From the NCBI GenBank assembly GCA_950097015.1, contig CATNEN010000025.1, positions 8,866,001-8,930,000 on the forward strand: DNA of 64,000 bases, in the 5' to 3' direction. The translations under genes were made by a program, and so were the position numbers. The first letter of the stretch is position 1. The number at the start of each line of letters is the position of its first letter. The notes below the pieces were generated by a model that searched no databases, was not told the origin of the DNA, and worked only from the letters and a program-made list of their open reading frames with translations. The stretch comes from Macrostomum hystrix (Eukaryota; Animalia; Platyhelminthes). Shown here piece by piece: positions 1 to 63,950 of this stretch.

Positions 1-2040
1 CGAGGGGCCCGCGCAGATGGCGGTCACATCGTCGGCATATCCCACCTTCAGGACTGGGTCAGGCCGAGTGCTTTTTAGCAGCTCATCCATGACGAGATTC
101 CACAGCAGTGGGGTGAGGACGCCACCTTGGGGCCCTCCTTTTAGGACAGGTGCCGAGAGCACCCTGCCTTCGAGGTGGGCCACCACGTGGCGATTCCGGA
201 TCATGTACATGACCCAACGGACGAGGTGGGGGTGAGTGGCCCTGGAAACCAGGGCCTTCTCAAAGGCTTCGAAAATAACGTTATCGAAGGCCCCCTCAAT
301 ATCAAGGAAAACAGCCAGGGCAAAACCGCTGCCCAGCACTGCCTTCTCGAGAGTCTCCACAATGCAGTGGAGGGCGCTCTCCGTGGACCGGCCCGCCCGA
401 AAGGCGTGCTGGTTTGGTGAGAGCGGGGCCCGCCCTAGCTCTACAGTAAGAAGGCGCCAGAGCACCAGTCTTTCCATGAGCTTGAGGCAGGTGGAAGTCA
501 AGCTTATCGGGCGATAAGACTTGACCGAGCGATAGTCGCCTTTGGCGGGCTTCGGGATGAAGACGACCCGGGCTTCATGCCACCGCGCTGGTACGTAGCC
601 CAGCACGATGCAGGCCCGTAGAAGTCTGCAGAGGAGATGGAGGAAGCGGCCATTTTTAACCGCTTCATGCAGAAAGGCCGGATATATACCATCTGGCCCA
701 GGTGCTTTAAAAGGATTGAATGACTTAGCCGCGCGAACGATGCGGTCATTCGTAACGAGTGACTGAGCCAGGCCCTGACCTCCACGCGAGTGGTCGTCTG
801 GGCCGAAGTGCGCCGGTACACTCGGGAAGAAATGCCCTAGCATAAGCTCGAGCGTTTCCTCCGGGCGCTCAGTGATCGAGCCGTCCGGCTTTTTAATCGA
901 TGAGAGCTTGGAGAAGCGGTCGTTGGTGAGCGCCTTTACCACGCGGGCCGTGGGCCGCGAGCCCTCAAGCCCTTCGCAGTATTGTCGCCACTTGTCCGCT
1001 TTTGCCCTTCTGACCCGGCCCTTAAACTCATGGATGGCGCGAGTATAGGCCTCTTTGTCATCAGGGTCGTGCGAGGTTTTCAGCTTCCTCTGGAGAGCCT
1101 TAGCTCGGCGTCTTAGGACTCCGAGCTCGGGGTTCCACCAGGGGGCCGATTTTTTGCCTTTGTAGGCTTTGAGCGGGCAAGCCATTTCGTAGGCCTCTGT
1201 GATGGCGCCGCCCAGCAGGGCAGCCACTCCATCCAGGTCCTGCGTGGTTTCCATGGCCATGGAGGGGTCAGAATCCCGAAGGCCCTCATGCAGCTTTTGG
1301 CTGAACGCGGGCCAGTCGGTATTTCTGACATTACGCCTCCAAATAGGCTTTTGCTTCTTATCGGGGGTGCCGATGTTGAAACGGATGAAACGGTGGTCCG
1401 AGAGCGAGCTTTCGGTCTCCCACACCTCCCACCCCAGCACCCTTGGGAGGATGCCGGGTGAGGCCAGGGTGACGTCAAGCACCTCAGCCCACCGCCCATT
1501 GTCGAAAGTGGGCGTGTTGCCCACATTGCAGAAGTTTAGAGGCGTGCCGCTGACGAAGGCCAGGAGCTCTTCGCCGCGGTCATTGATTTTTGAGCTACCC
1601 CAGTGGGTGTGATGCGAGTTTACATCTCCCGCGAGGAGCAGCTCGAAGTTTCGTGCCCTGGCGAATTCACAGAGGGCGACGAGGGTATCGCTAACCACGG
1701 GGGCGTCGCCTGCCAGGTAGGCGGATGCCACGAGGGTCAACTTGTTAGGCACAATGTGTGCAGATTGGATGACGCAGATGTCCCCGTTAGAGAGATCGGG
1801 TCTCATCCACGCATTTAAGGCTTTTGCGGCATAGATCAGTGATCTAGGGCGGACAGAGTCTGCCATGCAGAAGCAGTCATAGCCAGCAGGAATGTTGCTT
1901 GGCTTGTTCTTTGATAGCCAGGGCTCCTGCACAAGTACAAGGCCCGGCATCATGCGCTCTGTCGTGCGCATCAGATTGACTGATGCTGCCACGCAGTGCT
2001 GGGTGTTAACTTGCAGACATGATATTCCGGGGATCATCAT
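1..2040 (-). CDS. Non-LTR retrotransposon ORF2 (APE endonuclease + reverse transcriptase), runs off the left edge
   Basis: Hand translation from ATG at 2040 gives MMIPGISCLQVNTQHC...LVQEPW...AGDVNSHHTHWGS...SDHRFI (endonuclease), then KAPGPDG, YRPISLTS, FLDIEGAFD, PQGGVL and YADD at 28-39, in frame with the ATG. It is absent from the ORF track, consistent with no stop before the window edge. Confidence 0.95.
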   Translation of the reverse strand, partial: MMIPGISCLQVNTQHCVAASVNLMRTTERMMPGLVLVQEPWLSKNKPSNIPAGYDCFCMADSVRPRSLIYAAKALNAWMRPDLSNGDICVIQSAHIVPNKLTLVASAYLAGDAPVVSDTLVALCEFARARNFELLLAGDVNSHHTHWGSSKINDRGEELLAFVSGTPLNFCNVGNTPTFDNGRWAEVLDVTLASPGILPRVLGWEVWETESSLSDHRFIRFNIGTPDKKQKPIWRRNVRNTDWPAFSQKLHEGLRDSDPSMAMETTQDLDGVAALLGGAITEAYEMACPLKAYKGKKSAPWWNPELGVLRRRAKALQRKLKTSHDPDDKEAYTRAIHEFKGRVRRAKADKWRQYCEGLEGSRPTARVVKALTNDRFSKLSSIKKPDGSITERPEETLELMLGHFFPSVPAHFGPDDHSRGGQGLAQSLVTNDRIVRAAKSFNPFKAPGPDGIYPAFLHEAVKNGRFLHLLCRLLRACIVLGYVPARWHEARVVFIPKPAKGDYRSVKSYRPISLTSTCLKLMERLVLWRLLTVELGRAPLSPNQHAFRAGRSTESALHCIVETLEKAVLGSGFALAVFLDIEGAFDNVIFEAFEKALVSRATHPHLVRWVMYMIRNRHVVAHLEGRVLSAPVLKGGPQGGVLTPLLWNLVMDELLKSTRPDPVLKVGYADDVTAICAGPS

Positions 2041-2052
2041 GCAGGCAGAGGT

Positions 2053-3600
2053 CTACTTGGAGGGGGACCCAGCCAGAAGGCGGTCCTCCTCCTCCGGGTC
2101 GATGTCGGTAGCCATGGGCTCCTCCGTGCCCAGGCCCCGAGCCGGAGACGGGAACTCGACGGCGTCAGCCGCCCAGTCCCCGCCCCCGGCCCCGAGCCCA
2201 GGCCCAGAGTCGCCCTCAACTGGAGCCGACACCGCTCCCTGGGCCGTGGGAGGGGCGCTCGAAGGGCCCTGCTCGATGGAGCTGGGCACCTCTGAGGCCT
2301 CCCCCGTAGCCCTTGGTTGCGGCGCCTGCCCCGGTGGGCCACCGCGCATCTCAGCGCGCAGCTGGGCCATCTTGGCGGTTCGCACCACCTCGGAGGCCCG
2401 CTGGAGAAGGCCCCGGCGCTTTGTGACACGCGCGGGGCGACGCTCAGAGCTGCCAGCGATGGCACGCTCTGGCCTTTTTTGGCGGGACGACTGGGCCCTG
2501 CCCCCAGTCCCAGCCTTGGGGTCCGAGGACCCTTCATTGGCCGGTACGGTGGTGGGCCCGGTCTGACCTCGGGTTTTATCCGCCTCGAAGGCGAAGATTT
2601 TGGTCTTCCACAGACCAATGCAAATGTTGGCGCCATCTGGGTAGCGGCGTGTCCATTGCTCGGACAGGCCCAGAATGGCGGTGAAACCGGTGCCGTCGGG
2701 GCGCAGGATCGTGCGGTGCACGATCAGGCCCGCTGTCGGCAGCTCCCGGTTCATCGCGATGAGGCCCCTGCGGAGGTCCTCAGCGCTGGTGACGACACTT
2801 TTCGCCGGGACGAAGATACGGTGTCGCTTGGTCTTTGGTGGCTCGTTCTCCCGTAGGAACTCGAGGCCAGCCGCCCAGCTCTGCGTGGGCAGCAACTCGA
2901 GGAGCCGCCGCCCCGATTCCGCATCGCCGGGCCAGACGACGAAGCACGATTCCCTGGTAGCGCTTGCGCCGACCGCCAGGGGCTCGCCCTTCAGTTGAAG
3001 TTGCCACAACATAGCATCTATGTTGCGGCAAATGTCGCTGAGCTGTTCGCTGCTCAGCCTTTTCCCGTCTCTGCCGGTGATGATGACGGCAGGTTGCCTA
3101 CGTGCGATGGCGGCGTAGGTAGCTTGTGGTCCCGGGCCCTGTCCGGTGGCGTCCCCACCCTCGGGATCTGCGTCGGCGGTGGGCACAGGGCCCTCCGCCT
3201 CCGCTTCTCCTTCGGGCCGGGCAGCCGTCCGGATGGGCGCCGGGCCCTCCTTGGCCCGCGACCCTGGCCTCGGGGCGTCGTGGGCTCCGCCCCGTGCAGG
3301 AGCCTGGGCAGGAGGCACAAGGCCCCCCGCCCCAGCCCCCGCCCTAGGCAGAGCCCCTTCGGCCCCTCTGGCCTGGGCCTGGTCCTTGGTCAATGGAGCC
3401 GACGTGCCGTGGGCCAGCATGCGCCTACGGCGTTTTGCCGCTCCAGAGGTGGTGGAGCGCTTAGCGCCCCGGTCATCGCGCGAGTTGGGCAGCGCGGCAT
3501 TTGTGGCGGTCGCGGGGCCAGCTAGCCCGGGCGCCGCAGCGTGTATGGCCTCAGGCACCATGGTGTCCTCGGCCGGAGCAGTTGAAGGGCTAGAAGCCAT
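2053..3600 (-). CDS. Non-LTR retrotransposon ORF1 (LOA-clade-like; C-terminal half resembles DUF4780-type ORF1)
   Basis: 519-aa ORF in the track (first ATG at 3600) ends 12 nt before the ORF2 ATG; low-complexity Ala/Pro/Gly N-terminus. Clade assignment is by recognition only. Confidence 0.8.
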   Translation of the reverse strand: MASSPSTAPAEDTMVPEAIHAAAPGLAGPATATNAALPNSRDDRGAKRSTTSGAAKRRRRMLAHGTSAPLTKDQAQARGAEGALPRAGAGAGGLVPPAQAPARGGAHDAPRPGSRAKEGPAPIRTAARPEGEAEAEGPVPTADADPEGGDATGQGPGPQATYAAIARRQPAVIITGRDGKRLSSEQLSDICRNIDAMLWQLQLKGEPLAVGASATRESCFVVWPGDAESGRRLLELLPTQSWAAGLEFLRENEPPKTKRHRIFVPAKSVVTSAEDLRRGLIAMNRELPTAGLIVHRTILRPDGTGFTAILGLSEQWTRRYPDGANICIGLWKTKIFAFEADKTRGQTGPTTVPANEGSSDPKAGTGGRAQSSRQKRPERAIAGSSERRPARVTKRRGLLQRASEVVRTAKMAQLRAEMRGGPPGQAPQPRATGEASEVPSSIEQGPSSAPPTAQGAVSAPVEGDSGPGLGAGGGDWAADAVEFPSPARGLGTEEPMATDIDPEEEDRLLAGSPSK

Positions 3601-3847
3601 TGAAAGCTGCAATGAAGAGAGGGGCTTCCTGTAGACACAGGCAGGAATAACCCGCTCAGCCGCGATCCCAAAACTGAGCGGGGGCAGCCAAAAAAGACAA
3701 GTTACAACCCGGGGTGGGATGCCAGGACCACCGGGAGGAACCGTAAGAGACCAGACTACTCCCTGGCCAAGCGTCCATCAGCACGGTCAACACTGGGACA
3801 TTGGAGGGTGCCATTGAGCCGGCGCCGAGGCCTGCGGGCTGGCCGCA

Positions 3848-4000
3848 AACCCTGTTAAGGTCAAAGGGTGACACCTGTCCCTCAGGGCCGTAGCCAGAGG
3901 TACCTGATCACGCACAGGTGCACGAAAATTGCGGACAAGCCACATACCCTGTTAAGGTCAAAGGGTGACACCTTTCCCTCCAGCCGGGGCTAGAGGTACC
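3848..4000 (-). repeat. ~55-bp direct repeat with hairpin potential in the LINE 5' UTR
   Basis: accctgttaaggtcaaagggtgacacct(g/t)tccctc...agaggtacc occurs at ~3849-3904 and ~3946-4000. Confidence 0.9.
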
Positions 4001-6189: not shown

Positions 6190-7135
6190 ATAATCTCCAT
6201 TACTACAAGTAATCTCTGCATTAATTGCATTCTCGGCATTAATCTCTGCATTAATTGCATTCTCTGCATTAATCTCTGCATTAATTGCATTCTCTGCATT
6301 AATCTCTGCATTAATTGCATTCTCTGCATTAATCTCTGCATTAATTGCATTCTCTGCATTAATCTCTGCATTAATCTCTGCATTAATTGCATTCTCTGCA
6401 TTAATCTCTGCATCAATTGCATTCTCTGCATTAATCTCTGCATTAATCTCTGCATTAATTGCATTCTCTGCATTAATCTCTGCATCAATTGCATTCTCTG
6501 CATTAATCTCTGCATTAATTGCATTCTCTGCATTAATCTCTGCATTAATTGCATTCTCTGCATTAATCTCTGCATTAATTGCATTCTCTGCATTAATCTC
6601 TGCATTAATTGCATTCTCTGCATTAATCTCTGCATCAATTGCATTCTCTGCATTAATCTCTGCATTAATTGCATTCTCTGCATTAATCTCTGCATTAATT
6701 GCATTCTCTGCATTAATCTCTGCATTAATCTCTGCATTAATTGCATTCTCTGCATTAATCTCTGCATTAATCTCTGCATTAATTGCACTCTTTGCATTAA
6801 TCTCTGCATTAATTGCATTCTCTGCATTAATCTCTGCATTAATTGCATTCTCTGCATTAATCTCTGCATTAATCTCTGCATTAATTGCATTCTCTGCATT
6901 AATCTCTGCATTAATCTCTGCATTAATTGCATTCTCTGCATTAATCTCTGCATTAATTGCATTCTCTGCATTAATCTCTGCATTAATCTCTGCATTAATT
7001 GCATTCTCTGCATTAATCTCTGCATTAATCTCTGCATTAATCTCTGCATTAATTGCATTCTCTGCATTAATCTCTGCATTAATCTCTGCATTAATCTCTG
7101 CATTAATTGCATTCTCTGCATTAATCTCTGCATTA
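6190..7135. repeat. Minisatellite of mixed 12-bp (attaatctctgc) and 18-bp (attaattgcattctctgc) units
   Basis: ~945 bp here, but only ~150 bp at 33965-34113 and 59291-59439. Confidence 0.97.
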
Positions 7136-7319
7136 AGAATAAAAACTACAATTAATCTCTTCAAACTGTCATCCCTGTTTTTGAGCTACATCTCTTTTTT
7201 ATAAATGCTTCTGAAGTTAAATTGCGTTTAGCGACTCGTAATTATCCCAATTAACTTTCCCAACCCCTGTCATGCCTTCTAAATGATTTAATAAAAAATG
7301 GCTTTCATTTTTGGGGGAG

Positions 7320-8480: not shown

Positions 8481-10906
8481 TCCTTATTCTGTCAATGGAA
8501 CTTTTAAATCAAGTAAACGAGATTTAAATCAATTCCTGCTCTTATCTGGAATCTTAGCGAGTCACAACAGATTAAATCACTCACAATCAATTTATTCGAG
8601 TCTTCGCGTTCATACTGTGTTATTCTTTTTCATTGGGAGTTTCGCCGGGCCGGAGGAACACGCGGGTCCCATCGCTTATCTATTCCGCTTCGCTCGCTAC
8701 CGCAGTCTCTAACGCTATATAATTCCAGATTCCCTGCTGCTATTGAAACCATTGGTAGGACACCGACCCCGGTGAATAGTCGCTAGCTTTAAATTCCTCA
8801 CGCTCCAGCTAGGACATTCATTTTATTACACTAACGAATTTTAAATGAATAGAGATGATAAACTTAGGGATTTGACTAAATCAATGAAGTATGTAACAAG
8901 AAGAAAAATCTAAAGCCTGCGGACTGGTCGCTGACTAGCTATTGTAATTTGTAACAGAGTATGATGAGCTGACATTAATAATTGTATTCAGAAATGGACT
9001 ACAAGTCAAAAAACTAAAAAATACCCAGCGGGAAAGCCTACCTCGAATCTAGCTGAATGTAACTCTAGTTTTTAGGATAGGCTTGAATTTTCTTTTTAGT
9101 GCACCAAAGATGCTTTTTGCATCAAAATCATGCACCAAAAAATCGTTCAGTTTCAGAAAAATCGGCCAAACAAAAGTTTAACTTAAAATAGCAAGAATAA
9201 GTCTAGTTATATTCTAGCTATATAGTGTCTGTCGTTTTTCGAGAAAACTATTTTTTGTTTTAAAATATTTTCATAGCACAGAATAACAAAACTTTACAAT
9301 AATATTTTTGTTCTTACGCGAAACAAAGTCTGGGTTGTAAAATAGCAATCTCTTAATTAAGTATGATAATAAAAAAGAAAAAAGTGAATCGTCTTAACAT
9401 TGGTACAGTCCATTTTTTAACTTTTCTTGTGTTCTCGCGCGCCGACTAACTAGCAAGCCTACATTTTATACTATAGATTTGACTGGTTCCTACGTCTCGC
9501 TTTTTTTGGTGGAAATTACCAAGGTACGGAAATGTTAAAACCTCTATCAGAACGTTTACAACTCTTATGTGTTTCTTTCTCATTTTGAACTTTTTATTAT
9601 TACTTATTTCGATACAGCAATTATGTACAATATAATGTTGTAGGTATTGCTAATGTAGCTATTTAGCTGGTCAATCAAAGCACTTTGCTGAGTTTTTTTA
9701 ATCAAAATATACATTTCAACTTGCTAAGGTTTGCTAATGTAATAGACAAATCAACGAAAATATACAAATCAGTTCCTTTAAAAGTATTTCGAGTTAGTGG
9801 CGTGACATTTTTTTAAAGAAATGTTTATTTAAATTGAACTATTTTAAGAAAATATATTATAAATTGTATTAGGTATTTAAGGGATACGTTGCTGTCTTAA
9901 AAAACTATCCTAATTGCATGCAATGCAGAAGATGTTGAACTATTTAGATCCCCATTTTACCTTACAATATGTGATTGTTGTTTCTTACATCTTGTGATAT
10001 GATTTTGTTTGTATGCTAAAAAGTTTTTTTTAACTCTTTTTAGTTTTCTACTTGGCAATTTTAAACAGCCCGTGCTGTTTTACACCTTCTTGTAAAATCT
10101 TGATATCTTATGAAACTTTGCTGAAATTCAAAAGCTGAAGGACCAAGCTATTGAAAATGTAATTCTTATCAATCATTGTTTTTTATTCACCGACTTGACT
10201 TACCTGGGTGGGACATCGGTTTTGGACCATATTAGAAGTGGAGGTGTCTATTTTATGCACCTGTTGTTTCTGCGGTTGAGTCCTATGAAAGGCAATATTT
10301 ACTCGATTCTTAAATACCTTGTATGATTGTGGCTGTTTTAGTCTTTTGCAGCTGCTTTAAGAATACTTTATTATTGCTTTTGTATGACAGTTCTTCGTGA
10401 GTCACGTTAATCATCTATCTATTTTTCTAACATGGCTATTGTACTTGATTTTTTATTAACCTCATTTAACCTCATGGCGTCTTGTATCCAGCTATGTGTA
10501 ATTTTTCAAGTAATTTTTGTGTATTCTAGTCATATTTATCTAAGTCACTTTCTGTTTTTTTTATGCGGTACTTAATTAAAAACAGAAGTCACTAGCATTC
10601 TGGATTGAATTTTATCTATTCAAAAAGCATCTGAAAAATGTCCTTTTGCACAAACATCTTTGCAGTCATTTGTATTGATGTTCATTTTTTATCTGCTTAT
10701 TTGTGAAAGTATAGTATATACATTTGTTATTATGAGTACCAATACTGTTGCGTTTTATTGAGTGGATTTGCTTGTTGTTATTTAAAAAAATCGAAGTAGG
10801 CTTACTAGGAGAGCAATACAAGATGTACTTTTATGGGGCATAAACTTTTGCATCCTAACATCATAAATCTAATTTTTGAACTCCGTTTCAGAACTGAAAG
10901 CTTAAC

Positions 10907-13900
10907 ATGACTACAAAGCTGAGCTCATTAATCGTTATTTCTCTGCTGCTGATCCGTAAGTGAAGTGGCTTGTTCGTTGAGGTTACATAATGATATTGAT
11001 TATTAATTATATTCGCTGATTAAAATTGCCCGTTGGGGCTACATGTGCAGCACAGCACAGCCGTAGCTATTGCGCGGCTCATCTGAAGGCAGCATGCAGC
11101 TGTTCAGTCCATGGACCGGGGCCACACCTACCCTCAATTACCAGCTAGTACCCGTTTTACAGCTGGGTGAACTGAAGCAATGCTGAGTGAGTTGTCCTGC
11201 TAGTGGACACGAATTGTTCCAGCGAAGGCGGAATCGAACCCCCGACCTTCAAGTCGATTAGCTTGAGAAAACCACTGGCTACAAACCCTGATTTCATATA
11301 ATTTTATTAAAATCTGTACTATTAATTATTTATTAAACATTGTCAGATACTGCCAGGTCTGCGGTTTGGCACTGCATACACAACGCACGCCGCGAAGACC
11401 CCGTCAAAATTGGAGACATCAACGCGATGATGGTGAGTAGTATGTTGCAAACGGCCTTTATCGACCAGAAGATAAGAAATCCTTAGATTAAAGGATACTT
11501 ATGTACTGAGTACGTAAGCGATGCCTTAAGAATAGCCAAGTAGGCGAGTTTTATTAGCACCCAGTTGTGTCAGATTTGCAGCCAATGACAATAGACTGCG
11601 CTTTCAAAGGCTGTGTGCCTGTACGTGGACTGAGGAGGCCGCGACTCCCCACAAAAATTTTTACCTAAGCTAATATGCTGGCACTAGTTATATAGATGGC
11701 TAAGTGTGAAGAAAATGCTATTTAAACGACTTGCTCAACCTCCAAGACACATTTAGCTTCTATTCGTGCGGTTCTATCCAGTCAGCTGCAAGGAGCCAGG
11801 ATAAAATAAAGCTGCGTCTGCTGTTTCAGGTGATGACGTATGTCCGAGGTGATCCGGGCTATAGGAAGAACCTGGAGTGCGGGTATCTTCTGAGCGTGAT
11901 CAACTATGACCAGCCCAGACAGATGTACATTGACGTGCCCGTGGTGGACTTTGACAACAATATTGACCCGTTTTGCAACAAAACCGACGTGTTCAGCTTC
12001 TGGCATAAGTACAACGAGAGTGAGTGGTTGGCTTAAGATAAAAGTTTCCTCTAAGTTTCCTCTCAACCCTCGACAATTCAACACTCCTATCAAGTAGAAA
12101 TCATTTATAGTAATTCAACTAAAACTCCGAGTCACAGTAATTTCGTCGGCTTTCGCCTAAAATTAAAATTTTAACGTAAAAGTACAAGCAGGCAATGTGT
12201 GACTTTTGATTAAGGAAAATGTGGTGCTTTCGTTTTGGCTTTACGAGTGTAATTTCGTAACTCTATAAATATTGCGAACATCTCTGTTTAATTATTATTG
12301 AGTATTCACAACAGCTGCTATCAGCCGACTGCACACATTTCAGCTGCTTGGCGGCGGGAGTCCTGGTGCAGTGAATCGTCCGTGTCACGCAGTTTCCGAT
12401 TCTTGCCGTTCAGGCAGCAAATAATCAACTTGTGGGACTCGTGAGTAGCACTGCAGCTTCTTACTGAGCTCTCTTATGAGAATGCGAGTTGAGACCCTGC
12501 TGCCTCACTTACCACTTCACTCTGCAGGTCGTACTACCTGACTGCGCAATTCCGGTCTGACAATGAGCAAGTCCGTTCCGATGCCAAGGGATTGCAGTTG
12601 GATGCGTGGGTGGTGCACCCAAAATTTTGCCACTTGAAAATGATGGATCTCGATAACTACTGCTACCTGGTCACTCCTGAGAATGTGTCGCTAGCTCAAT
12701 CCAATCAGGTTGGAAAACTCTTACTCGGCAACTTTTTCACTGTCCGAAACGCCTCTTCTGGCCGGGATATCTTAGACTTTCTGCGCAGATTCTCTGAGAG
12801 AAGTACGCATTTCTTTTTCGAATTTCTGATGAGGATATTTTTGCTCAATTGTGCTCAATCTTGTCACCTCTTTGCGCTTCCCTCAGACAAAGCCAGGAAA
12901 GACGAGTATCCTTACGAGTCGCCACTGGACCTGACTAATCTCAGACTGTGGACCGGCTACTTTGTGAACGAATACTCCTTCAGCGAGGAGGACCCGGTCA
13001 TGTTTTACTCAGATCCGATAGACGACTGCATTGTCAAGCAAGTGAAAGTGTGAGTGCTGCTTCTCTATCCTGATTCTAGTCTAAAGGATATTGTAAATAT
13101 CATATGGTTTAGAATGTCAATCATTCGATTTCAGGACTCGTGAGATTTTGACCGGCTGTAATAAAAACCCAGCGCCTGTAGCCCTTAATTGGCTTAGCAA
13201 CGGCAGCGTGCATTTTTCCTGTGTGCCAGGCAACGATTCGATGCCAGCTCTGATCCAGTTCAGCCAGATTCCTAAAACCAAGGGCGACCTGCACCCGCAG
13301 CTGTTCCGCACCTGCGACATCGCGCCGCCAACAACGACAACTACAGCGCCGCCAACAACGACTACGACTCCGGAACCAACGACAACTACAGCGCCGCCAA
13401 CAACGACTACGACTCCGGAACCAACGACAACTACAGCGCCGCCAACAGCGACCACGACTCCGGAACCAACGACAACTACAGCGCCGCCAACAACGACTAC
13501 GACTCCGGAACCAACGACAACTACAGCGCCGCCAACAACGACTACGACTCCGGAACCAACGACAACTACAGCGCCGCCAACAACGACTACGACTCCGGAA
13601 CCAACGACAACTACAGCGCCGCCAACAACGACTACGACTCCGGAACCAACGACAACTACAGCGCCGCCAACAATGACTACGACTCCGGAACCAACGACAA
13701 CTACAGCGCCGCCAACAACGACTACGACTCCGGAACCAACGACAACTACAGCGCCGCCAACAACGACTACGACTCCGGAACCAACGACAACTACAGCGCC
13801 GCCAACAACGACTACGACTCCGGAACCAACGACAACTACAGCGCCGCCAACAACGACTACGACTCCGGAACCAACGACAACTACAGCGCCGCCAACAACG

Positions 13901-15058
13901 ACTACGACTCCGGAACCAACGACAACTACAGCGCCGCCAACAACGACTACGACTCCGGAACCAACGACAACTACAGCGCCGCCAACAACGACTACGACTC
14001 CGGAACCAACGACAACTACAGCGCCGCCAACAACGACTACGACTCCGGAACCAACGACAACTACAGCGCCGCCAACAACGACTACGACTCCGGAACCAAC
14101 GAAAACTACAGCGCCGCAAACAACGACTACGACTCCGGAACCAACGACAACTACAGCGCCGCCAACAACGACTACGACTCCGGAACCAACGACAACTACA
14201 GCGCCGCCAACAACGACTACGACTCCGGAACCAACGACAACTACAGCGCCGCCAACAGCGACCACGACTCCGGAACCAACGACAACTACAGCGCCGCCAA
14301 CAACGACTACGACTCCGGAACCAACGACAACTACAGCGCCGCCAACAACGACTACGACTCCGGAACCAACGACAACTACAGCGCCGCCAACAACGACTAC
14401 GACTCCGGAACCAACGACAACTACAGCGCCGCCAACAACGACTACGACTCCGGAACCAACGACAACTACAGCGCCGCCAACAACGACTACGACTCCGGAA
14501 CCAACGACAACTACAGCGCCGCCAACAACGACTACGACTCCGGAACCAACGACAACTACAGCGCCGCCAACAACGACTACGACTCCGGAACCAACGACAA
14601 CTACAGCGCCGCCAACAACGACTACGACTCCGGAACCAACGACAACTACAGCGCCGCCAACAACGACTACGACTCCGGAACCAACGACAACTACAGCGCC
14701 GCCAACAACGACTACGACTCCGGAACCAACGACAACTACAGCGCCGCCAACAACGACTACGACTCCGGAACCAACGACAACTACAGCGCCGCCAACAACG
14801 ACTACGACTCCGGAACCAACGACAACTACAGCGCCGCCAACAACGACTACGACTCCGGAACCAACGACAACTACAGCGCCGCCAACAACGACTACGACTC
14901 CGGAACCAACGACAACTACAGCGCCGCCAACAACGACTACGACTCCGGAACCAACGACAACTACAGCGCCGCCACCAATCAGAGCAGTGCCGTCAGCGGC
15001 AATACTATCATTATTATTGATTTTGTTGTTGCCCTTGTTATCATCGTGGCTATTGTGA
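10907..15058 (+). CDS. Copy A: signal peptide-CUB-like-C-type-lectin-like-mucin stalk surface protein, 7 exons, ~927 aa
   Basis: Exons 10907-10955, 11347-11432, 11830-12019, 12344-12440, 12528-12802, 12887-13049, 13135-15058; all introns GT..AG with matching phases; 2784 nt with no internal stop. MTTKLSSLIVISLLLI is a signal peptide; WHC...GYRKNLECxY/W...WCS...LTAQFRSD...KGLQL is a CUB pattern; C..DNYCYLV...GNFFTVRN...LWTGY is CTL-like (weaker). Confidence 0.85.
11000..11288 (-). mobile_element. tRNA-derived CORE-type SINE in intron 1 of the receptor gene (also ~36800-37090 and ~62126-62417)
   Basis: Minus strand: A-box-like gtagccagtgg, B-box ggttcgattcc, then CORE-like gcttcagttcacccagctgtaaaacgggtac. 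Confidence 0.85.
13322..14974 (+). repeat. Coding VNTR: 36 x 45-bp units encoding APPTTTTTPEPTTTT (mucin stalk)
   Basis: 13346-14965 = 1620 bp = 36 units, preceded by one 24-bp partial unit. Confidence 0.98.
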
Positions 15059-15185
15059 TCGGTGTCGTTGTCTACTTTAGTCGTCAAAGAGGACAGCAGC
15101 CGCCATCAACTAATGGGGACTAGCCGCCACTGCGGGGTAATCAGAAGGAGAAAAAGGCCAGAAGCCGCTACTGGGGACGAACACT

Positions 15186-15620
15186 CGGGATTTCAAAAGC
15201 GATAGAAACGCTGTGGCTAAGAGTGTCGGCTTGACTGTGGACAATGTCGAAGGCACTTTCTGAAGTCTGTTTGGTGGGCGCTTTTACTCATAATTTTGCA
15301 TTGGCTAACAGCGTTGCTTAATTTTGTTTTGTTTATAAAGACAGAAATGTTTTTACGATCGCTTATTTCCGGTCTGCGAAGGAAGGAAAACCGGAATTGT
15401 CATTTTTCTGTTTTCATTTGAAATCTAAAATAATCTGTAATGCATGCTGAAGAAGCAGAAGTGCCCCATTGTCAGTCGACCTTTCGAACCCCCGCGCGTG
15501 CGCGTATCTAGCTTGTAATTGCGATCCCCGCGACCCAGTTCCTGTATTCCCATGTTTTACTTCTCTGTTTAGTAGTAATTGGTGATGGAGCTAATGATAT
15601 ATTGATAAGGTTCCGCAATT
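15186..15620 (+). repeat. 3'-flank segment of the receptor gene, duplicated elsewhere in each unit (4911-5395, 32631-33150, 40958-41392, 57957-58476)
   Basis: cgggatttc(a/t)aaagcgatagaaacgctgtgg...gataa(a)ggttcc(g/c)caattaa is shared at high identity; the distal copies carry an (aacaattaatt)n expansion. Confidence 0.92.
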
Positions 15621-21667: not shown

Positions 21668-21850
21668 TATGCTATATTTATGCCAGTTAGGCTTCTCCCT
21701 TTCCACTTTAGGGTAGCATTCATTAACAGTAGGCAATGTTATACATTGTTTTGCTCAATTATTTTTTAACCTGATTCGAACTCATGTGACCACATTAGTG
21801 TGTAGTATGATGTGGCAAGGGTCACACACATATGCTGATATAGCTTTTGC

Positions 21851-23902
21851 GCCTTTGCGACCGCCCTGGGATCAGCGCAGGCGCCGGACTACAGCAGAAT
21901 CAGCTCAGCCATCGCCACTGCCGCTGCCAAGACTCTGCCGCTTATGGAACCCGCGTCACGGCAACTTCCAGTTTGGGCGAGCGACCCGGAGGTCCGTGAG
22001 GCCCGCCGCACTGTCGAGCAGCTGCGGCGAGCCAGGCGACCGATATCCGATGCCGAGAAGGCCCTGGCAGACGCCTACGCAAGTCGACAGAAAGCCGCTG
22101 TTGACGACGCGATCCGGGCTGTCACCTCTGTCGGGCCTGAACGGCAGAGCAGGGTCGTCTGGCCGGTCGTGAACGCCCTCACCGGTCGAAAAAAAAAGAA
22201 GGCGGCGCTCAACCCGGCTGGCGACACTGCCGAGGAGCGCAGAAACGAGCTGCATACCTTCTTCGCCGCCGTCGACTCTGCCGAACGAGATGCCGCTGCC
22301 CCCCGAGGTGGCGCTACCGCGGCAGGAGGACTTCGACACCAGTCCAGTGACCAGCACGGACATCGTGGAGTTCGCCCGCAGGGCACCGCGCCCCCGGTCC
22401 GGATGAGGTCCCCGTCGAGGCGCTGCGGGTCACAAGGGTTGCCACCGAGGTGGCCCGCGTGATGAACGGCGTCCTGGCGGGAGGCCCTGCGCCCCGCGAG
22501 TGGACCCAGGCCACCATCGTCGGCATCCCGAAGAAGCCCGGCACTACGCGGAATGAGGAGCATCGCGGGATCTCGCTCATGTCCTGTGCCGCGAAGCTGT
22601 TCAACCGGGTGCTGTTAGCACGGTTACAGCCTGTGCTGGACTCGTTTCTGCGGTACGAGCAGAACGGGTTCCGGCACGGTGACTCAGATCCTGGCCCTCC
22701 GCCGCATCATCGAGGAGGCGCGCATCCACCAGTCAAGCCTTGTCGTCATCTTTGTTGACTTTCTCAAGGCTTTCGACTCGGTGGCCCGCGGCGCGCTGCC
22801 TCACGTACTCCGTGCCTACAACATACCGCAGCAGCTGATCTCCGCCATCATCGCGCTGTATCAGGACACAACCGCTGTGTTAGCGACGCCAGACGGACCG
22901 TCGGACCAGTTCAGCACTACCTCCGGAGTGCTGCAGGGTGACACTCTGGCGCCCTTTCTCTTCGTGCTGGTGATGGACTGGGTGCTCAGGACCGGCCTGC
23001 CGACTGCAGAGGACGCTTTTCTGCTTCAAAGGCGCACTAGTCGACGGCACCCGAAGAAGAAGCTGTCTGTCCTCAGCTACGCGGACGACCTGCCCCGCTG
23101 TCTACGACGGCCGAAGGCGCCCAACGGCTGCTGGATGGCCTGACTGCGGCGGCGGCGAGGGTCGGCCTCGCTATCAACGCCATGAACACCGAGGTGCTGA
23201 CGGTGCCGCATAACCTACCTGCCGAGATTCGACTACAAGACGGTGACGGCCCGGGACCGGGCTCCCGAAGTGCCGTCAGTTCGTCTACCTCGGCGGACTG
23301 GTGCCTGACGTGGGCGACGACCTGGCGAGACGGTGCGGCAAGGCCTGGGCCGCCTTCCGTTCTGTGCGGGCGGTGCTGCTCTCCGAGGCCCTGTCGAACG
23401 GCGCCAGGTCCCAGCTGTTCCAGGCGGTTGTCGAGACCGCCCTGTTGTACAATGCTGAGACCTGGACGATGACCGGGGCGCTCGAGGCGCAGCTCGACGC
23501 GGCGCATGCGGCCCTAGTTCGCGCCGCTTTCGGTGCCCGACGCGGCCCTGGCAGCGAGACATCCGATTCCCTCTACCAGCGTGCGTGCCTAACTTGGCCT
23601 TCTGTCCTGCTGAGTCAGCGGCGCCTGTGTCAGGCCGGGCATGTCTTCCGGGCCGAAGCCTACTGCCCAGAGACGCTGCAGGATGTCCTGCTGCGGACAT
23701 CGCAGGGACCGCGCAGGCGCGGCCTGGGTCAATCAGCCCGCTATGTCGACCGTCTTTTTGAAGACGCCCGAGCACCCAGCCAGGCGGCCGGCGTGAAGTA
23801 TGTCAGAGACGCGCGAAACTCTGAAACGCGCGATTTGACGCCCCCCCTCTTGGCCACTTTTGTGTTCGGCTTGGGCGTAACTATTATTATTATTATTATT
23901 AT
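21851..23902 (+). mobile_element. 5'-truncated, frameshifted RTE-clade LINE (also 47593-49644)
   Basis: RGISLMSCAAKLFNR, QNGFR, FVDFLKAFDSV, GVLQGDTLAPFLF, SYADDL, LLYNAETW split over several frames; (ATT)n tail; TSD tatagcttttgc/tatagctttgc. Confidence 0.93.
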
Positions 23903-29918: not shown

Positions 29919-30044
29919 AATTGTGTGTTTGGATATGATAGTAGCGTGAATATGTAAGATCGAACGTGTTTTAAGATAAGCGCTACAACGCTTACTAAAT
30001 CCTGAACCGCCGCCAGATGGCCCTAGTCTACAGTGAGCTGCTTG

Positions 30045-36707: not shown

Positions 36708-39700
36708 ATGACTACAAAGCTGAGCTCATTAATCGTTATTTCTCTGCTGCTGATCCGTAAGTGAAGTGGCTTGTTCGTTGAGGTTACATAATGATATTGA
36801 TTATTAATTATATTCGCTGATTACACTTGCCCGTTGGAGCTACATGTGCAACACAGCACAGCCGTAGCTATTGCGCGGCTCATCTGAAGGCAGCATGCAG
36901 CTGTTCAGTCCATGGACCGGGGCCACACCTACCCTCAATTACCAGCTAGTACCCGTTTAACAGCTGGGTGAACTGAAGCAATGCTGAGTGAGTTGTCCTG
37001 CTAGTGGACACGAATTGTTCCAGCGAAGGCGGAATCGAACCCCCGACCTTCAAGTCGATTAGTTTGAGAAAACCACTAGGCTAAAAACCCTGATTTCATA
37101 TAATTTAATTTAAAATCTGTACTATTAATTCTTTATTAATCATTGTCAGATACTTCCAGGTCTGATGATTGGCACTGTCTACAAAATGCACGCCACGAAG
37201 ACCCCGTCGAAATTGGAAATGAAAACGCGATTAGGGTGAGTAGTATGTTGCAAACGGCCTTTATCGACCAGAAGATAAGAAATCCTTAGATTAAAGGATT
37301 CTTATGTACTGAGTACGTAAGCGATGCCTTAAGAATAGCCAAGTAGGCGAGTTTTATTAGCACCCAGTTGTGTCAGATTTGCAGCCAATGACAATAGACA
37401 GCGCTTCCAAAGGCTGTGTGCCTGTACGTGGACTGAAGAGGCCGCGACTCCCCACAAAAATTTTTACCTAAGCTAATATGCTGGCACTAGTTATATAGAT
37501 GGCTGAATGTGAAGAAAATGCTTTTTAAACGACTTGCTCAACCTCCAAGACACATTTAGCTTCTATTCGTGCGGTTCTATTCAGTCAGCTGCAAGGAGCC
37601 AGGATAAAATAAAGCTGCGTCTGCTGTTTCAGGTGATGACGTATGTCCGAGGTGATCCGGGCTATAGCAAGAACCTGGAGTGCACGTGGACTCTGAAGGC
37701 GATCAACTATGACCAGCCCAGACAGATGTACATTGACGTGCCCGTGGTGGACTTTGACAAGAATACTGACCCGTTTTGCAACAAAACCGACGTGTTCAGC
37801 TTCTGGCATAAGTACAACGAGAGTGAGTGGCTTGGCTTAAGATAAAAGTTTCCTCTAAGTTTTCTCTCAATCCTCGACAATTCAACACTCCTATCAAGGA
37901 GAAATCATTTATAGTAATTCAACTAAAACTCCGAGGTACTGAGTAATTTCGTCGGCTTTCGCCTAAAATTAAAATTTTAACGTAAAAGTACAAGCAGGCA
38001 ATGTGTGACTTTTTATTAAGGAAAATGTGGTGCTTTCGTTTTGGCTTTACGAGTGTAATTTTATTACTCTATAAATATTGCGAACATCTCTGTTTAATTT
38101 TTATTGAGAGATTAATTATTATTTACAACAGCTGCTATCAGCCGACTGCACACATTTCAGCTGCTTGGCGGCGGGAGTCCTGGTGCAGTGAATCGTCCGT
38201 GTCACGCAGTTTCCGATTCTTGCCGTTCAGGCAGCAAATAATCAACTTGTGGGACTCGTGAGTAGCACTGCAGCTTTTTACTGAGCTCTCTTATGAGAAT
38301 GCGAGTTGAGACCCTGCTGCCTCACTTACCACTTCACTCTGCAGGTCGTACTACCTGACTGCGCAATTCCGGTCTGACAATGAGCAAGTCCGTTCCGATG
38401 CCAAGGGATTGCAGTTGGATGCGTGGGCGCTGGACCCAAAATTTTGCCACTTGAAAATGATGGATCTCGATAACTACTGCTACCTGGTCACTCCTGAGAA
38501 TGTGTCGCTAGCTCAATCCAATCAGGTTGGAAAACTCTACCTCGGCAACATTTTCACTGTCCGAAACGCCTCTTCTGGCCGGGATATCTTAGACTTTCTG
38601 CGCAGATTCTCTGAGAGAAGTACGCATTTCTTTTTCGAATTTCTGATGAGGATATTTTTGCTCAATTGTGCTCAATCTTGTCACCTCTTTGCGCTTCCCT
38701 CAGACAAAGCCAGGAAAGACGAGTATCCTTACGAGTCGCCACTGGCCCTGACTAATCTCAGACTGTGGACCGGCTACTTTGTGAACGAATCCTCCTTCAG
38801 CGAGGAGGACCCGGTCATGTTTTACTCAGATCCGATAGACGACTGCATTGTCAAGCAAGTGAAAGTGTGAGTGCTGCTTCTCTATCCCGAGTCTAGTCTA
38901 AAGGATATTGTAAATATCATATGGTTTAGAATGTCAATTATTCGATTTCAGGACTCGTGAGATTTTGACCGGCTGTAATAAAAACCCAGCGCCTGTAGCC
39001 CTTAATTGGCTTAGCAACGGCAGCGTGCATTTTTGCTGTGTGCCAGGCAACGATTCGATGCCAGCTCTGATCCAGTTCAGCCAGATTCCTAAAACCAAGG
39101 GCGACCTGCACCCGCAGCTGTTCCGCACCTGCGACATCGCGCCTCCAACAACGACAACTACAGCGCCGCCAACAACGACTACGACTCCGGAACCAACGAC
39201 AACTACAGCGCCGCCAACAACGACTACGACTCCGGAACCAACGACAACTACAGCGCCGCCAACAGCGACCACGACTCCGGAACCAACGACAACTACAGCG
39301 CCGCCAACAACGACTACGACTCCGGAACCAACGACAACTACAGCGCCGCCAACAACGACTACGACTCCGGAACCAACGACAACTACAGCGCCGCCAACAA
39401 CGACTACGACTCCGGAACCAACGACAACTACAGCGCCGCCAACAACGACTACGACTCCGGAACCAACGACAACTACAGCGCCGCCAACAACGACTACGAC
39501 TCCGGAACCAACGACAACTACAGCGCCGCCAACAACGACTACGACTCCGGAACCAACGACAACTACAGCGCCGCCAACAACGACTACGACTCCGGAACCA
39601 ACGACAACTACAGCGCCGCCAACAACGACTACGACTCCGGAACCAACGACAACTACAGCGCCGCCAACAACGACTACGACTCCGGAACCAACGACAACTA

Positions 39701-62033: not shown

Positions 62034-63950
62034 ATGACTACAAAGCTGAGCTCATTAATCGTTATTTCTCTGCTGCTGATCCGTAAGTGAAGTGGCTTGT
62101 TCGTTGAGGTTACATAATGATATTGATTATTAATTATATTCGCTGATTACACTTGCCCGTTGGAGCTACATGTGCAACACAGCACAGCCGTAGCTATTGC
62201 GCGGCTCATCTGAAGGCAGCATGCAGCTGTTCAGTCCATGGACCGGGGGCCACACCTACCCTCAATTACCAGCTAGTACCCGTTTAACAGCTGGGTGAAC
62301 TGAAGCAATGCTGAGTGAGTTGTCCTGCTAGTGGACACGAATTGTTCCAGCGAAGTCGGAATCGAACCCCCGACCTTCAAGTCGATTAGTTTGAGAAAAC
62401 CACTAGGCTACAAACCCTGATTTCATATAATTTTATTTAAAATGAGTTCTGCTAAAATCTGTGCTACTAATTATTTATTAAACATTTTCAGCTACTGCCA
62501 GGTCTGATGATTGGCACTGCGTGCACGGCGCAACCCACGAAGCGGAAGCCAAAATTGGAGACATAAACGCGATTAGGGTGAGTAGTATGTTGCAAACGGC
62601 CTTTATCGACCAGAAGATAAGAAATCCTTAGAATAAAAGATTCCTATGTACTGAGTACGTAAGCGATGCCTTAAGAATAGCCAAGTAAAGCGAGTTTTAT
62701 TAGCACCCAGTTGGGTCAGATTTGCAGCCAATGACAATGGACAGCGCTTCCAAAGGCTGTGTGCCTGTACGTGGACTGAGGAGGCCGCGACTCCCCTCAA
62801 AAGTTTTTATCCGAGCTAATGCTGGCACTAGTTATATAGATGGCTAAATGTGAAGAAAATGCTTTTTAAACGACTTGCTCAACCTCCAAGACACATTTAG
62901 CTTCTATTCGTGCGGTTCTATCCAGTCAGCTGCAAGGAGCCAGGATAAAATAAAGCTGCGTCTGCTGTTTCAGGTGATGACGTATGTCCGAATTGATCCG
63001 GGCTATAGCAAGAACCTGGAGTGCACGTGGACTCTGAAGGCGATCAACTATGACCAGCCCAGACAGATGTACATTGACGTGCCCGTGGTAGACTTTGACA
63101 ACAATATTGACCCGTTTTGCAACAAAACCGACGTGTTCAGCTTCTGGCATAAGTACAACGAGAGTGAGTGGCTTGGCTTAAGACAAAAGTTTCCTCTAAG
63201 TTTCCTCTCAACCCTCGACAATTCAACACTCCTATCAAGGAGAAATCATTTATAGTAATAATTCAACTAAAACTACGAGTCACAGTAATTTCGTCGGCTT
63301 TCGATGCAAATTAAAACTCTAACGTGGAAGTACAAGCAGGCAATGTGTGGCTTTTTATTAAGGAAAATGTGGTGCTTTCGTTTTGGCTTTACGAGTGTAA
63401 TTTCGTTACTCTATAAATATTGCGAACATCTCTGTTTAATTCTTATTGAGTATTCACAACAGCTGCTATCAGCCGACTGCACACATTTCAGCTGATTCGC
63501 GGCAGGAGTCCTGGTGCAGTGAATCGTCCGTGTCACGCAGTTTCCAATTCTTGCCGTTCAGAAGGCAAATAATCAACTTGTGGGACTCGTGAGTAGCACT
63601 GCAGCTTCTTACTGAGCTCTCTTATGAGAATGCGAGTTGAGACCCTGCTGCCTCACTTACCACTTCACTCTGCAGGTCGTACTACCTGACTGCGCAATTC
63701 CGGTCTGACAATGAGCAAGTCCGCTCCGATGCCAAGGGATTGCAGTTGGATGTGCAGGTGCTGGACCCAGATTATTGCCACCTGAAAATGATGGATCTCG
63801 ATAACTACTGCTACCTGGTCACTCCTGAGAATGTGTCGCTAGCTCAATCCAATCAGGTTGGAAAACTCTTCCTCGGCAACATTTTCACTGTCCGAGGCGC
63901 CTCTTCTGGCCGGGATATCTTAGACTTTCTGCGCAGATTCTCTGAGAGAA
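62034..63950 (+). CDS. Copy C of the CUB/CTL-like protein, exons 1-5 (truncated by the window end)
   Basis: Exons 62034-62082, 62492-62577, 62974-63163, 63492-63588, 63676-63950; frames and GT/AG sites are conserved. Confidence 0.85.

What the first reader, a model, noticed from the sequence alone, without database searches (positions are those of the whole stretch)
11347..11432. Hypervariable 86-nt exon 2 and mosaic sharing among the three copies
Seen: A TARSAVWHCIHNARREDPVKIGDINAMM, B TSRSDDWHCLQNARHEDPVEIGNENAIR, C TARSDDWHCVHGATHEAEAKIGDINAIR. Each pair differs at ~11 of 28 residues with no indels, and WHC is fixed. C shares SDD and AIR with B but TARS and KIGDINA with A. In exon 3, C shares SKNLECTWTLKA with B but DNNIDPF with A, and A carries a clustered block GYLLSV in place of TWTLKA. 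Inference: short-tract gene conversion or recombination among a larger pool of paralogs shuffles variable patches.
Basis: partly seen in the sequence, partly recalled or inferred. Interest (0 to 1): 0.8.

Follow-up and report, generated by a model that had tools for sequence, protein, structure and literature searches.

The report
Hypervariable exon in flatworm receptor family
A cluster of about 19 nearly identical flatworm (Macrostomum hystrix) genes for a mucin-stalked CUB plus C-type-lectin surface protein differ almost only in an 86-base exon and a few short patches, which have been reshuffled among copies; this is the pattern of a fast-diversifying recognition-receptor family, a known kind of evolution seen here in a new family.

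Summary
Exon 2 (11347-11432) differs by 17-22 of 86 nt between copies A, B and C, against 2-4% in the flanking introns and 0.7-1.0% across the 9-16 kb repeat units.

The genome matches the published M. hystrix assembly in size and contig count. It holds 21 exon-2 loci: 18 full copies, one partial copy and two solo exon-2 fragments, with 14 exon-2 types. RNA contigs confirm the seven-exon, SL trans-spliced model and show several exon-2 variants, all like germline copies where readable.

The protein is signal peptide, CUB, C-type-lectin-like domain, Thr/Pro stalk and a GPI-like tail.

Recombination among paralogs is pervasive: 54% of site pairs fail the four-gamete test, Rmin is 23, PHI p=0.0005, and multi-nucleotide patches occur in all combinations. 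Copy A is a four-switch mosaic. The GYLLSV block has identical donors.

Shuffling does not explain where the diversity came from. B, C and L005 have no exon-2 donor closer than 15 nt. Synonymous sites are also elevated in exon 2. The exon-3 patch shows pN/pS of about 14.

Best reading: selection keeps variable patches distinct while conversion homogenises the backbone. The scan already noted this family at copy C.

The parts
10891..10955 (+). Gene A exon 1. The spliced leader joins at 10891 (acceptor AG at 10889-10890). The ATG is at 10907 and the exon encodes the signal peptide MTTKLSSLIVISLLLI.
   Evidence: RNA contigs carry the Macrostomum SL letters directly before 10891 and a joint from 10955 to 11347. 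The SL sequence is given in PMC8629364. Exon 1 is nearly invariant among paralogs.
11347..11432 (+). Gene A exon 2 (HV1), 86 nt with the reading frame starting at 11349. It encodes the N-terminal strand region of the CUB domain, including its first Cys. This is the hypervariable exon of the finding.
   Evidence: Splice joints are. 41 of 86 sites segregate among 8 copies, against 6.6-8.4% in the introns. pN is 0.198 and pS 0.194 against an intron pi of 0.018-0.039.
37150..37235 (+). Gene B exon 2, a unique type whose nearest relative is 15 nt away.
62492..62577 (+). Gene C exon 2. Its only close relative is L013, 173 kb upstream, which differs by the adjacent change TGG>TTT (W>F).
11830..12019 (+). 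Gene A exon 3, the core of the CUB domain.
   Evidence: Splice joints at 11432/11830 and 12019/12344.
11881..11898 (+). HV2, the 18-nt block after the second CUB Cys. The family has five alleles linked by stepwise changes: TWTLKA, DWVLKA, GYLLNA, GYLLSV and RYLLRV.
   Evidence: In the patch 11860-11900, pN is 0.167 and pS 0.012, a ratio of about 14. Alleles are listed.
12344..12440 (+). Gene A exon 4. Its first four codons form a two-state patch (AWRR or DSRQ, 3 nt apart).
   Evidence: Joints at 12019/12344 and 12440/12528.
12528..12802 (+). Gene A exon 5, covering the end of the CUB domain and the start of the C-type-lectin-like domain. HV3 lies at about 12598-12646.
   Evidence: Joint at 12802/12887. 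HV3 has pN 0.118 and pS 0.048. The 20-nt window profile peaks at 12608-12627.
12887..13049 (+). Gene A exon 6, part of the lectin-like domain. It is conserved.
   Evidence: Joints. pN is 0.013.
13135..15058 (+). Gene A exon 7. It holds the end of the lectin-like domain, 36.6 copies of a 45-nt Thr/Pro repeat (13332-14978), and a hydrophobic GPI-like tail followed by the stop codon.
   Evidence: The ORF is and the tandem repeat. Stalk length ranges from 1 to about 37 repeats among paralogs.
10999..11256 (-). Interspersed repeat with a tRNA-like end (SINE-like) inside intron 1, present in all copies. It is not part of the variable system.
   Evidence: Self-matches appear at 19027 and 44770, and the first look of the genome search returned 1,252 candidates.

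Best explanation
The window holds three members of a Macrostomum-restricted tandem gene family. M. hystrix has about 19 copies over roughly 2 Mb of contigs C25 and C26, plus one pseudogene on C7.

Each gene encodes a cell-surface protein with a signal peptide, a CUB domain, a C-type-lectin-like domain, a Thr/Pro mucin stalk of variable length and a membrane anchor.

Frequent unequal exchange and gene conversion keep introns, the stalk, the tail and the flanks nearly identical between copies. This is concerted evolution.

A few short protein-coding patches stay, or are driven, different by selection for diversity. These are all of exon 2 (HV1), 18 nt of exon 3 (HV2), the first codons of exon 4, and about 50 nt of exon 5 (HV3). 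The same exchanges occasionally reassort the patches, giving new combinations.

What is shown: the gene model, expression of several variants, the extreme and sharply exon-bounded divergence, recombination among paralogs, and the same N-terminal variability in M. lignano relatives.

What is inferred: that selection rather than a mutational bias maintains the patches, that the patches form a ligand-contact surface, and that the protein is a recognition receptor. Immune or environmental recognition seems most plausible for a selfing, inbred free-living worm. A gamete or tissue-recognition role is also possible.
For: - Divergence contrast and significance.
- Variability falls to zero in the first full 20-nt windows past the 3' splice site and to 6% just before the 5' site, which a process blind to exons would not do.
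- HV2 has pN 0.167 against pS 0.012. HV3 has 0.118 against 0.048. The other exons have pN/pS of 0.4-0.8, except the non-HV part of exon 5 at 1.5.
- HV2 has five alleles connected by single, all non-synonymous steps.
- Indels in exon 2 are all in frame (+15, +24) except in one pseudogene.
- Exon-2 synonymous differences in same-amino-acid codons are 0.111 per site, against 0.015-0.047 in other exons. This fits older lineages whose flanks were homogenised.
- Recombination: Rmin 23, PHI p=0.0005; triplet tests; conflicting supported segment trees.
- Copy A's nearest relative switches four times in 2.4 kb: L007 at 0/94, L002 at 7/1021, B or L005 at 4/323, then L007 at 1/611. L002 has a quite different 3' end, with a transmembrane tail and no repeat array.
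- Patch haplotypes occur in all four combinations.
- Expression: spliced, SL-bearing contigs with L002-like and L007-like exon-2 letters and a third, unalignable 86-nt exon 2.
- Domains: the M. lignano relative P0008 gives CUB for residues 24-172 and C-type lectin for 173-350, by both features and structure. UniRef names several relatives 'CUB domain-containing'.
- Replication in a second species: M. lignano P0008 and P0016 differ at about 20 of the first 50 or so residues but at only 3 of the remaining 385 or so. P0007 against P0014 shows the same pattern.
Against: - Over all of exon 2, pN/pS is only about 1.0 by Nei-Gojobori, or about 1.8 against pure synonymous sites. Positive selection on HV1 is therefore not demonstrated.
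- No codon-model test was run on recombination-aware partitions.
- The ratio of exon-2 to intron divergence is similar (about 4-8 fold) at most depths of the family. A locally raised mutation rate would also predict this.
- The function, the ligand and the expressing tissue are unknown.
- The CUB and lectin assignment rests on a relative only 40-56% identical. Pfam and PDB sequence searches found nothing, and my AlphaFold model was unusable.
- Consensus polishing of near-identical tandem copies could blur fine-scale mosaics.
Confidence: 0.62

Rival explanations
1. Import model. The copies are very recent duplicates, and their exon 2 and other patches were pasted in by short-tract conversion from more diverged donor paralogs. 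Conversion is then the main source of the differences.
For: Copy A fits this. Its exon 2 to intron 3 region is L002-like (7/1021), with an L007-like insert at 11282-11376 (0/94). The GYLLSV block is identical in L002, L003 and L004. Two solo exon-2 fragments with intron flanks exist at C26:1089587 and C26:1047167.
Against: The exon 2 of B, C and L005 has no donor closer than 15-19 nt in the whole assembly. Only 21 exon-2 loci exist, so there is no cassette archive. Conversion within a closed pool cannot create the variants. Exchange is equally visible in the introns.
Confidence: 0.2
2. Exon-targeted mutational process. Germline or somatic hypermutation, or error-prone repair, is focused on exon 2, so that both silent and replacement sites change 4-8 times faster than the introns.
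For: pS is about equal to pN (about 0.19) in exon 2. C and L013 are identical over about 1,900 nt except for two adjacent bases in exon 2 and one other site. The exon-to-intron divergence ratio is similar at most depths. 8 of 41 variable sites have three or more states, and transversions are common.
Against: The variable zone stops at the splice sites. HV2 shows no synonymous excess. 10 of 28 codons are invariant and the frame is preserved. All exon-2 variant letters listed for the RNA contigs match germline copies, apart from two exon-2 sequences I could not read. No such mechanism is known in flatworms.
Confidence: 0.07
3. Neutral island. Exon 2 encodes a weakly constrained N-terminal segment that drifted apart once. 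It now escapes homogenisation only because mismatches block conversion tracts, with no selection for diversity.
For: Overall pN/pS in exon 2 is about 1. Heteroduplex rejection at diverged sequence is established knowledge. The signal peptide plus N-terminus is also the loose part in the M. lignano relatives.
Against: 13 of 14 exon-2 types keep an open frame, the Cys, the IG motif and both splice sites. The neighbouring patches HV2 and HV3 have pN well above pS. One breakpoint lies inside exon 2 itself, in A, L007 and L002.
Confidence: 0.08
4. Assembly or polishing artefact in a tandem array of near-identical units.
For: The assembly is a polished, haplotig-purged PacBio assembly (PMC10468722). 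L003 and L004 are identical and lie at the ends of two contigs, so they are probably one locus assembled twice.
Against: RNA contigs from separate runs and studies show the same thing: differences concentrated in exon 2 on an otherwise matching transcript. An independent M. lignano assembly shows the same pattern at protein level.
Confidence: 0.03

Closest known systems
MHC class I/II peptide-binding exons with homogenised introns (vertebrates)
   Same: Diversity is confined to short coding segments. Synonymous divergence is also raised inside the variable exon. The flanking introns are homogenised by recombination or conversion, and motifs are exchanged patch-wise between genes. This comparison rests on established knowledge, not on a test here.
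   Different: Here the variation is among about 19 tandem paralogs of an inbred selfing line, not among alleles. The fold is unrelated (CUB plus lectin, not an MHC groove), and no ligand is known.
Diversified invertebrate lectin or recognition families (snail FREPs, sea-urchin 185/333, amphioxus VCBPs, C. elegans CLEC proteins with CUB plus C-type-lectin domains)
   Same: These are lineage-restricted, clustered, secreted or surface proteins with lectin-type domains and hypervariable patches, and with recombination among family members. The CUB plus C-type-lectin architecture is shared with nematode CLEC proteins. This is from my own knowledge.
   Different: No sequence homology to any of them was detected. 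No immune induction data exist. The variability sits at the N-terminal edge of the CUB domain, not in the lectin domain. No evidence of somatic diversification was found.
Schistosoma mansoni polymorphic mucins (SmPoMuc)
   Same: A flatworm mucin-type tandem family in which recombination among a few genes generates variants, with variable repeat number. This is from my own knowledge.
   Different: In SmPoMuc the variable part is the N-terminal repeat domain, and the protein has no CUB or lectin domain. Here the repeat is a C-terminal stalk and the variable parts are patches in a globular domain. No homology was found.
M. lignano 'CUB domain-containing proteins' (for example A0A1I8GVV4 = P0008, PAA70984 = P0002)
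   Same: These are true homologues, colinear with exons 2-7 at 40-56% identity. They are also clustered on single contigs, and they are also variable chiefly at the signal peptide and the exon-2-equivalent segment.
   Different: They are type-I transmembrane proteins with a short stalk. Most M. hystrix copies have a long 45-nt-repeat mucin stalk and a frameshift-derived GPI-like tail. None has been characterised.

Membership tests
CUB domain (Pfam PF00431) | Significant match to the CUB profile | tested here: not met
   Pfam gave no hit at E<=1 for single exons or for the full-length M. lignano relatives. A PDB profile search also found nothing. The joined M. hystrix protein was not submitted, under the operators' rule.
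CUB domain (Pfam PF00431) | CUB beta-sandwich fold | tested here: inconclusive
   For relative P0008 residues 24-172, 24 of 30 nearest named clusters by features are CUB (score 0.91). The Atlas model aligns to CUB domains of neuropilin, SCUBE and tolloid at TM 0.62-0.70. However, that model has a mean pLDDT of 0.55, and my own AlphaFold model had a pLDDT of 42.
CUB domain (Pfam PF00431) | Four conserved cysteines in two pairs and the C-x-W-x-[IL] strand | tested here: met
   Read directly from the sequence. The cysteines are in exon 2 (HC), exon 3 (LEC and PFC) and exon 4 (WC), and are invariant in all intact copies. C-x-[WY]-x-L follows the second Cys. The spacing is longer than in typical CUB domains.
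C-type lectin-like domain (PF00059) | Profile match or fold | tested here: inconclusive
   No Pfam hit. For P0008 residues 173-350, 29 of 30 nearest named clusters are Lectin_C, and structural TM is 0.57-0.71 to CLEC7A, DGCR2 and the mannose receptor. The carbohydrate-binding motif was not examined.
GPI-anchored mucin-type surface protein | N-terminal signal peptide, Ser/Thr/Pro-rich stalk, and a C-terminal hydrophobic tail after small residues with no cytoplasmic part | tested here: inconclusive
   All three features are visible in the sequence, but no GPI predictor was available. The tail arose from a transmembrane segment by a 1-nt deletion relative to L002.
Multigene family under concerted evolution with diversifying patches | Recombination or conversion among paralogs | tested here: met
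   Four-gamete test, PHI, max-chi2 and segment trees, and the mosaic of copy A.
Multigene family under concerted evolution with diversifying patches | dN above dS in the variable patches | tested here: inconclusive
   Met for HV2 (ratio about 14) and HV3 (about 2.5). Not met for exon 2 as a whole (1.0 to 1.8). These are pairwise counts only; no codon-model test was run.

The most novel reading that the evidence does not exclude
Exon 2 is the target of a dedicated diversification process in a flatworm. This would be locally raised mutation, or cassette-like micro-conversion using gene copies and solo exon-2 fragments, that builds a combinatorial repertoire of CUB-lectin recognition receptors. 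It would be an independently evolved, germline or even somatic, anticipatory recognition system.
Probability: 0.08. Interest if true: 0.85.

Novelty: new member of a known kind. Interest (0 to 1): 0.55.

Why it matters
Free-living flatworms have no described variable recognition receptors. A genus-restricted, clustered and apparently well-expressed CUB-lectin-mucin family fits that role. Its members are kept almost identical except for a few exchangeable surface patches. It is a concrete candidate for immune, microbiome or self and mate recognition in a tractable model genus where RNAi and in situ hybridisation work.

It is also a clean natural example of concerted evolution and diversifying forces acting tens of bases apart. 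The pattern is replicated in two species. Stalk length varies from 1 to 37 repeats, and the anchor type switches from transmembrane to GPI-like by a frameshift. The general evolutionary pattern, however, is well known from MHC, toxin and lectin families.

Tried and rejected
- Pfam on single exons and on an exon 5 - intron - exon 6 read-through gave nothing.
- PDB sequence searches with exon 3, exon 5 and a family profile gave only chance hits or none.
- A word search with the non-repeat start of exon 7 found nothing.
- A profile word search added no relatives beyond M. lignano. The exhaustive representative search found only 5 proteins, and those named by their sources are M. lignano.
- AlphaFold on relative P0002 with a thin alignment gave a mean pLDDT of 42. 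I discarded the model and ran no fold search on it.
- PHI within exon 2 alone has no power, and the four-site L007-like run inside A is only marginal on its own.
- CpG decay is rejected as the cause of exon-2 variability: the transition to transversion count is 15:18 and 8 sites have several states.
- My first guess of a 27-nt micro-exon with an AA|GT donor was wrong. RNA joints show exon 4 is 12344-12440.
- All exon work was done exon by exon by reference, and in scripts codon counts were made per exon.
- Literature searches found no paper on this family.
Full report
**Where we are.** The window is G000:C25:8866001-8930000. G000 has 220,453,370 bases in 42 contigs, and contig C7 is 13,505,968 bases long. 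These figures are the total length, contig number and N50 published for the Macrostomum hystrix assembly, which came from a strongly inbred line and was haplotig-purged (PMC10468722). My work agrees with it and extends it.

**The observation.** The window holds three tandem units of about 25.7 kb. Exon 2 differs at 17 (A-B), 20 (A-C) and 22 (B-C) of 86 nt, and at 11 of 28 residues in every pair. The two flanking introns differ at 2.4-3.3% (Fisher p = 3e-9 to 2e-12).
- Across the whole alignable units, A versus B has 112 mismatches in 16,269 nt, 17 of them in exon 2 and 12 in exon 3.
- B versus C has 95 in 9,291 nt, 22 of them in exon 2.
- Exon 2 is the top-scoring 86-nt window in both comparisons.
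- In 20-nt windows the diversity is 0.14-0.28 inside the exon, 0.06 just upstream, and 0.00 from 15 nt past the donor site.

**Gene model and expression.** Transcript contigs from four public runs give these joints: 10955/11347, 11432/11830, 12019/12344, 12440/12528, 12802/12887 and 13049/13135. The gene therefore has seven exons, and all phases stay open in the paralogs. Contigs carry the letters of the 35-nt Macrostomum spliced leader directly before 10891 (sequence in PMC8629364), so the mRNA is trans-spliced.

The contigs show at least three exon-2 variants. One is L002-like at 11376. One is L007-like at 11386, 11392 and 11400-01. One is an 86-nt exon 2 too different to align. Every variant letter the tool listed matches a germline paralog state. 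One further contig differs from A at ten exon-2 positions that I could not read. Nothing calls for somatic change.

**The protein.** Exon 1 is a signal peptide. Exons 2-5 and 5-7 gave no Pfam or PDB sequence hit exon by exon.

An exhaustive HMMER search with the open exon 5 - intron - exon 6 read-through found five proteins. Those named by their sources are M. lignano, and several are named 'CUB domain-containing' by UniRef. They align colinearly with exons 2-7 at 40-56% identity.

For relative P0008, the ESM Atlas places residues 24-172 with CUB domains and residues 173-350 with C-type lectins. Both placements hold by features (24/30 and 29/30 nearest named clusters) and by structure (TM 0.62-0.70 and 0.57-0.71). 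My own AlphaFold run on a thin alignment failed (pLDDT 42) and I did not use it.

Exon 7 continues into 36.6 copies of a 45-nt Thr/Pro repeat and a hydrophobic tail without a cytoplasmic part.

**The family.** Genome searches find 18 full-length copies, one partial copy and two identical solo exon-2 fragments. The fragments are 265 nt long, their donor GT is changed to CT, and they lie near L014 and L015 in inverted orientation. That makes 21 exon-2 loci and 14 different exon-2 sequences.
- Ten copies form an array at C25:8.75-8.95 Mb.
- L003 and L004 are identical and sit at two contig ends, so they are probably one locus.
- L011 (frameshift in exon 2), L018 (stop codon, no exon 1) and L013 (deletion over the exon-7 acceptor) look broken.
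- More distant paralogs, 53% and 35% identical in exon 5, flank L017 and L002.

**Where the variation lies.** Among eight core copies the intron diversity is 0.018-0.039.

| Region | pN | pS |
|---|---|---|
| Exon 2 (HV1) | 0.198 | 0.194 |
| Exon-3 patch (HV2) | 0.167 | 0.012 |
| Exon-5 patch (HV3) | 0.118 | 0.048 |

The remaining coding sequence has pN of 0.007-0.045, with pN/pS mostly 0.4-0.8 and 1.5 in the non-HV part of exon 5.

Counting only codons that keep the same amino acid, exon-2 synonymous divergence is still 0.111, against 0.015-0.047 elsewhere. This rests on six private silent variants (Poisson p of about 0.003). Exon 2 has 41 of 86 segregating sites, 8 of them with three or more states, and transitions to transversions are 15:18, so CpG decay is not the cause.

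HV2 has five alleles linked by single replacement steps: TWTLKA, DWVLKA, GYLLNA, GYLLSV and RYLLRV. The exact A block is also in L002, L003 and L004.

**Mosaicism.** Three sequences cannot show homoplasy. Polarising with the outgroup copies L014-L018 shows that TARS, IGD.N and the final R are ancestral, so most of the A/B/C 'sharing' is retention. The extended family gives the real test.
- Seven distinct copies have 78 informative sites in 1.9 kb. 54% of the site pairs are incompatible, Rmin is 23 and PHI p=0.0005. Exon 2 alone gives Rmin 3.
- Triplet max-chi2 tests give p<=0.001 for each of A, B and C.
- Segment trees conflict with support. For example, L007 groups with L016/L017 in exons 4-5 (0.99) but with A downstream (0.96).
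- Copy A changes its nearest relative four times: L007 at 11282-11376 (0/94), L002 at 11377-12397 (7/1021, against 42/1021 to B, p=3e-7), B or L005 at 12398-12720, and L007 again at 12721-13331 (1/611). One switch lies inside exon 2. L002 has a quite different 3' end.
- Multi-nucleotide patches occur in all four combinations: HV2 with the exon-4 patch, the exon-4 patch with HV3, and the two halves of exon 2.

So exchange among paralogs is real and does reassort patches. It is equally evident in the introns.

**What conversion does not explain.** The exon 2 of B, C and L005 has no relative closer than 15-19 nt in the assembly, although their flanking introns are 2-3.4% from everything else. A closed pool of 21 loci cannot generate the variants by shuffling.

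The units are 0.7-1.0% apart, so 17-22 changes per 86 nt, several of them silent, cannot be recent point mutation under selection alone. The most economical account has two parts. First, the exon-2 lineages are older than the surrounding sequence appears, because conversion and unequal crossing-over keep homogenising the backbone. Second, selection for different protein patches, helped by mismatch-dependent blocking of conversion, preserves and extends the differences.

The sharp exon borders, the preserved frame and cysteine, the in-frame indels, and pN well above pS in HV2 and HV3 favour selection over a mutational hotspot. The overall pN/pS of about 1 in exon 2 and the C/L013 pair keep a hotspot possible at low probability. 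That pair is identical over about 1.9 kb except for TGG>TTT in exon 2 and one other site.

**Replication.** In M. lignano, P0008 and P0016 (both 438 aa) differ at about 20 of the first 50 or so residues and at 3 of the rest. P0007 and P0014 behave the same way. Family members sit side by side on single contigs. Mean identity among six relatives is 52% in the exon-2-equivalent segment against 84-93% in the exon 3-5 equivalents. An N-terminal variable module on a homogenised body is therefore a property of the family, not of this assembly.

**Verdict.** The finding is real, robust and interesting. It is a newly recognised member of a well-known class: clustered recognition-type genes with concerted evolution plus diversifying, exchangeable patches. 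Function is unknown. I commit to a surface recognition receptor, with the variable CUB edge as the contact site, at about 60%.

Noticed in passing
window 14960-15330; L031 (copy L002) tail: The GPI-like tail of A, B and C is the transmembrane segment of the L002/L017 type read in another frame after a 1-nt deletion. The old transmembrane-plus-cytoplasmic frame is still recognisable in A but now has stop codons. The family thus has two anchor types. This is the subject of note s1-408161.
   Followed up: partly
window 13332-14978 and 39149-40750; loci L031-L046: The number of 45-nt Thr/Pro stalk repeats ranges from 1 (L010, L011, L016) to about 37 (L003) among otherwise near-identical copies. 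A has 36.6 and B 35.6.
   Followed up: partly
G000:C26:1089587-1089851 and 1047167-1047431 (L022, L023): Two identical solo fragments of 265 nt hold only exon 2 with about 45 nt of intron 1 and 134 nt of intron 2. The frame is open, the exon-2 type is unique, and the donor GT is changed to CT. They lie about 5.5 kb upstream of L014 and L015 in inverted orientation. They could be conversion donors or relics.
   Followed up: partly
G000:C25:9689455 (L004) and C26:15253 (L003): These copies are identical over 10 kb and lie about 15 kb from the end of contig C25 and the start of C26. They are probably one locus assembled at two overlapping contig ends, which would join C25 to C26.
   Followed up: no
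window 11956-11964 (exon 3 codons 43-45): An Ile/Thr difference creates or removes an N-x-T glycosylation sequon (NNT against NNI). It is shared across otherwise unrelated copies, for example L016 against L017.
   Followed up: no
window 12803-12886 (intron 5): Intron 5 is 84 nt long, in frame and free of stop codons in all copies, so retaining it would insert 28 residues without breaking the frame.
   Followed up: no
window 21800-24000, 47800-50000, 2000-4000: Each unit carries a GC-rich (61-67% GC) reverse-transcriptase-bearing retroelement fragment (RVT_1, E=2e-13), followed by a THAP-domain ORF at 24058-24528.
   Followed up: no
window 29047-29919 and 54688-55244; 6210-7136: Unit-specific minisatellites are present: a 21-nt unit with 42 against 27 copies, and a 30-nt unit with about 26 copies in the first unit against about 5 in the others.
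   Followed up: no
G000:C25:9323257-9335231 (+) and 9536815-9547108 (-): Two mirror-image groups of three family genes, with distant, intermediate and close paralogs in the same order, suggest a large inverted segmental duplication.
   Followed up: no
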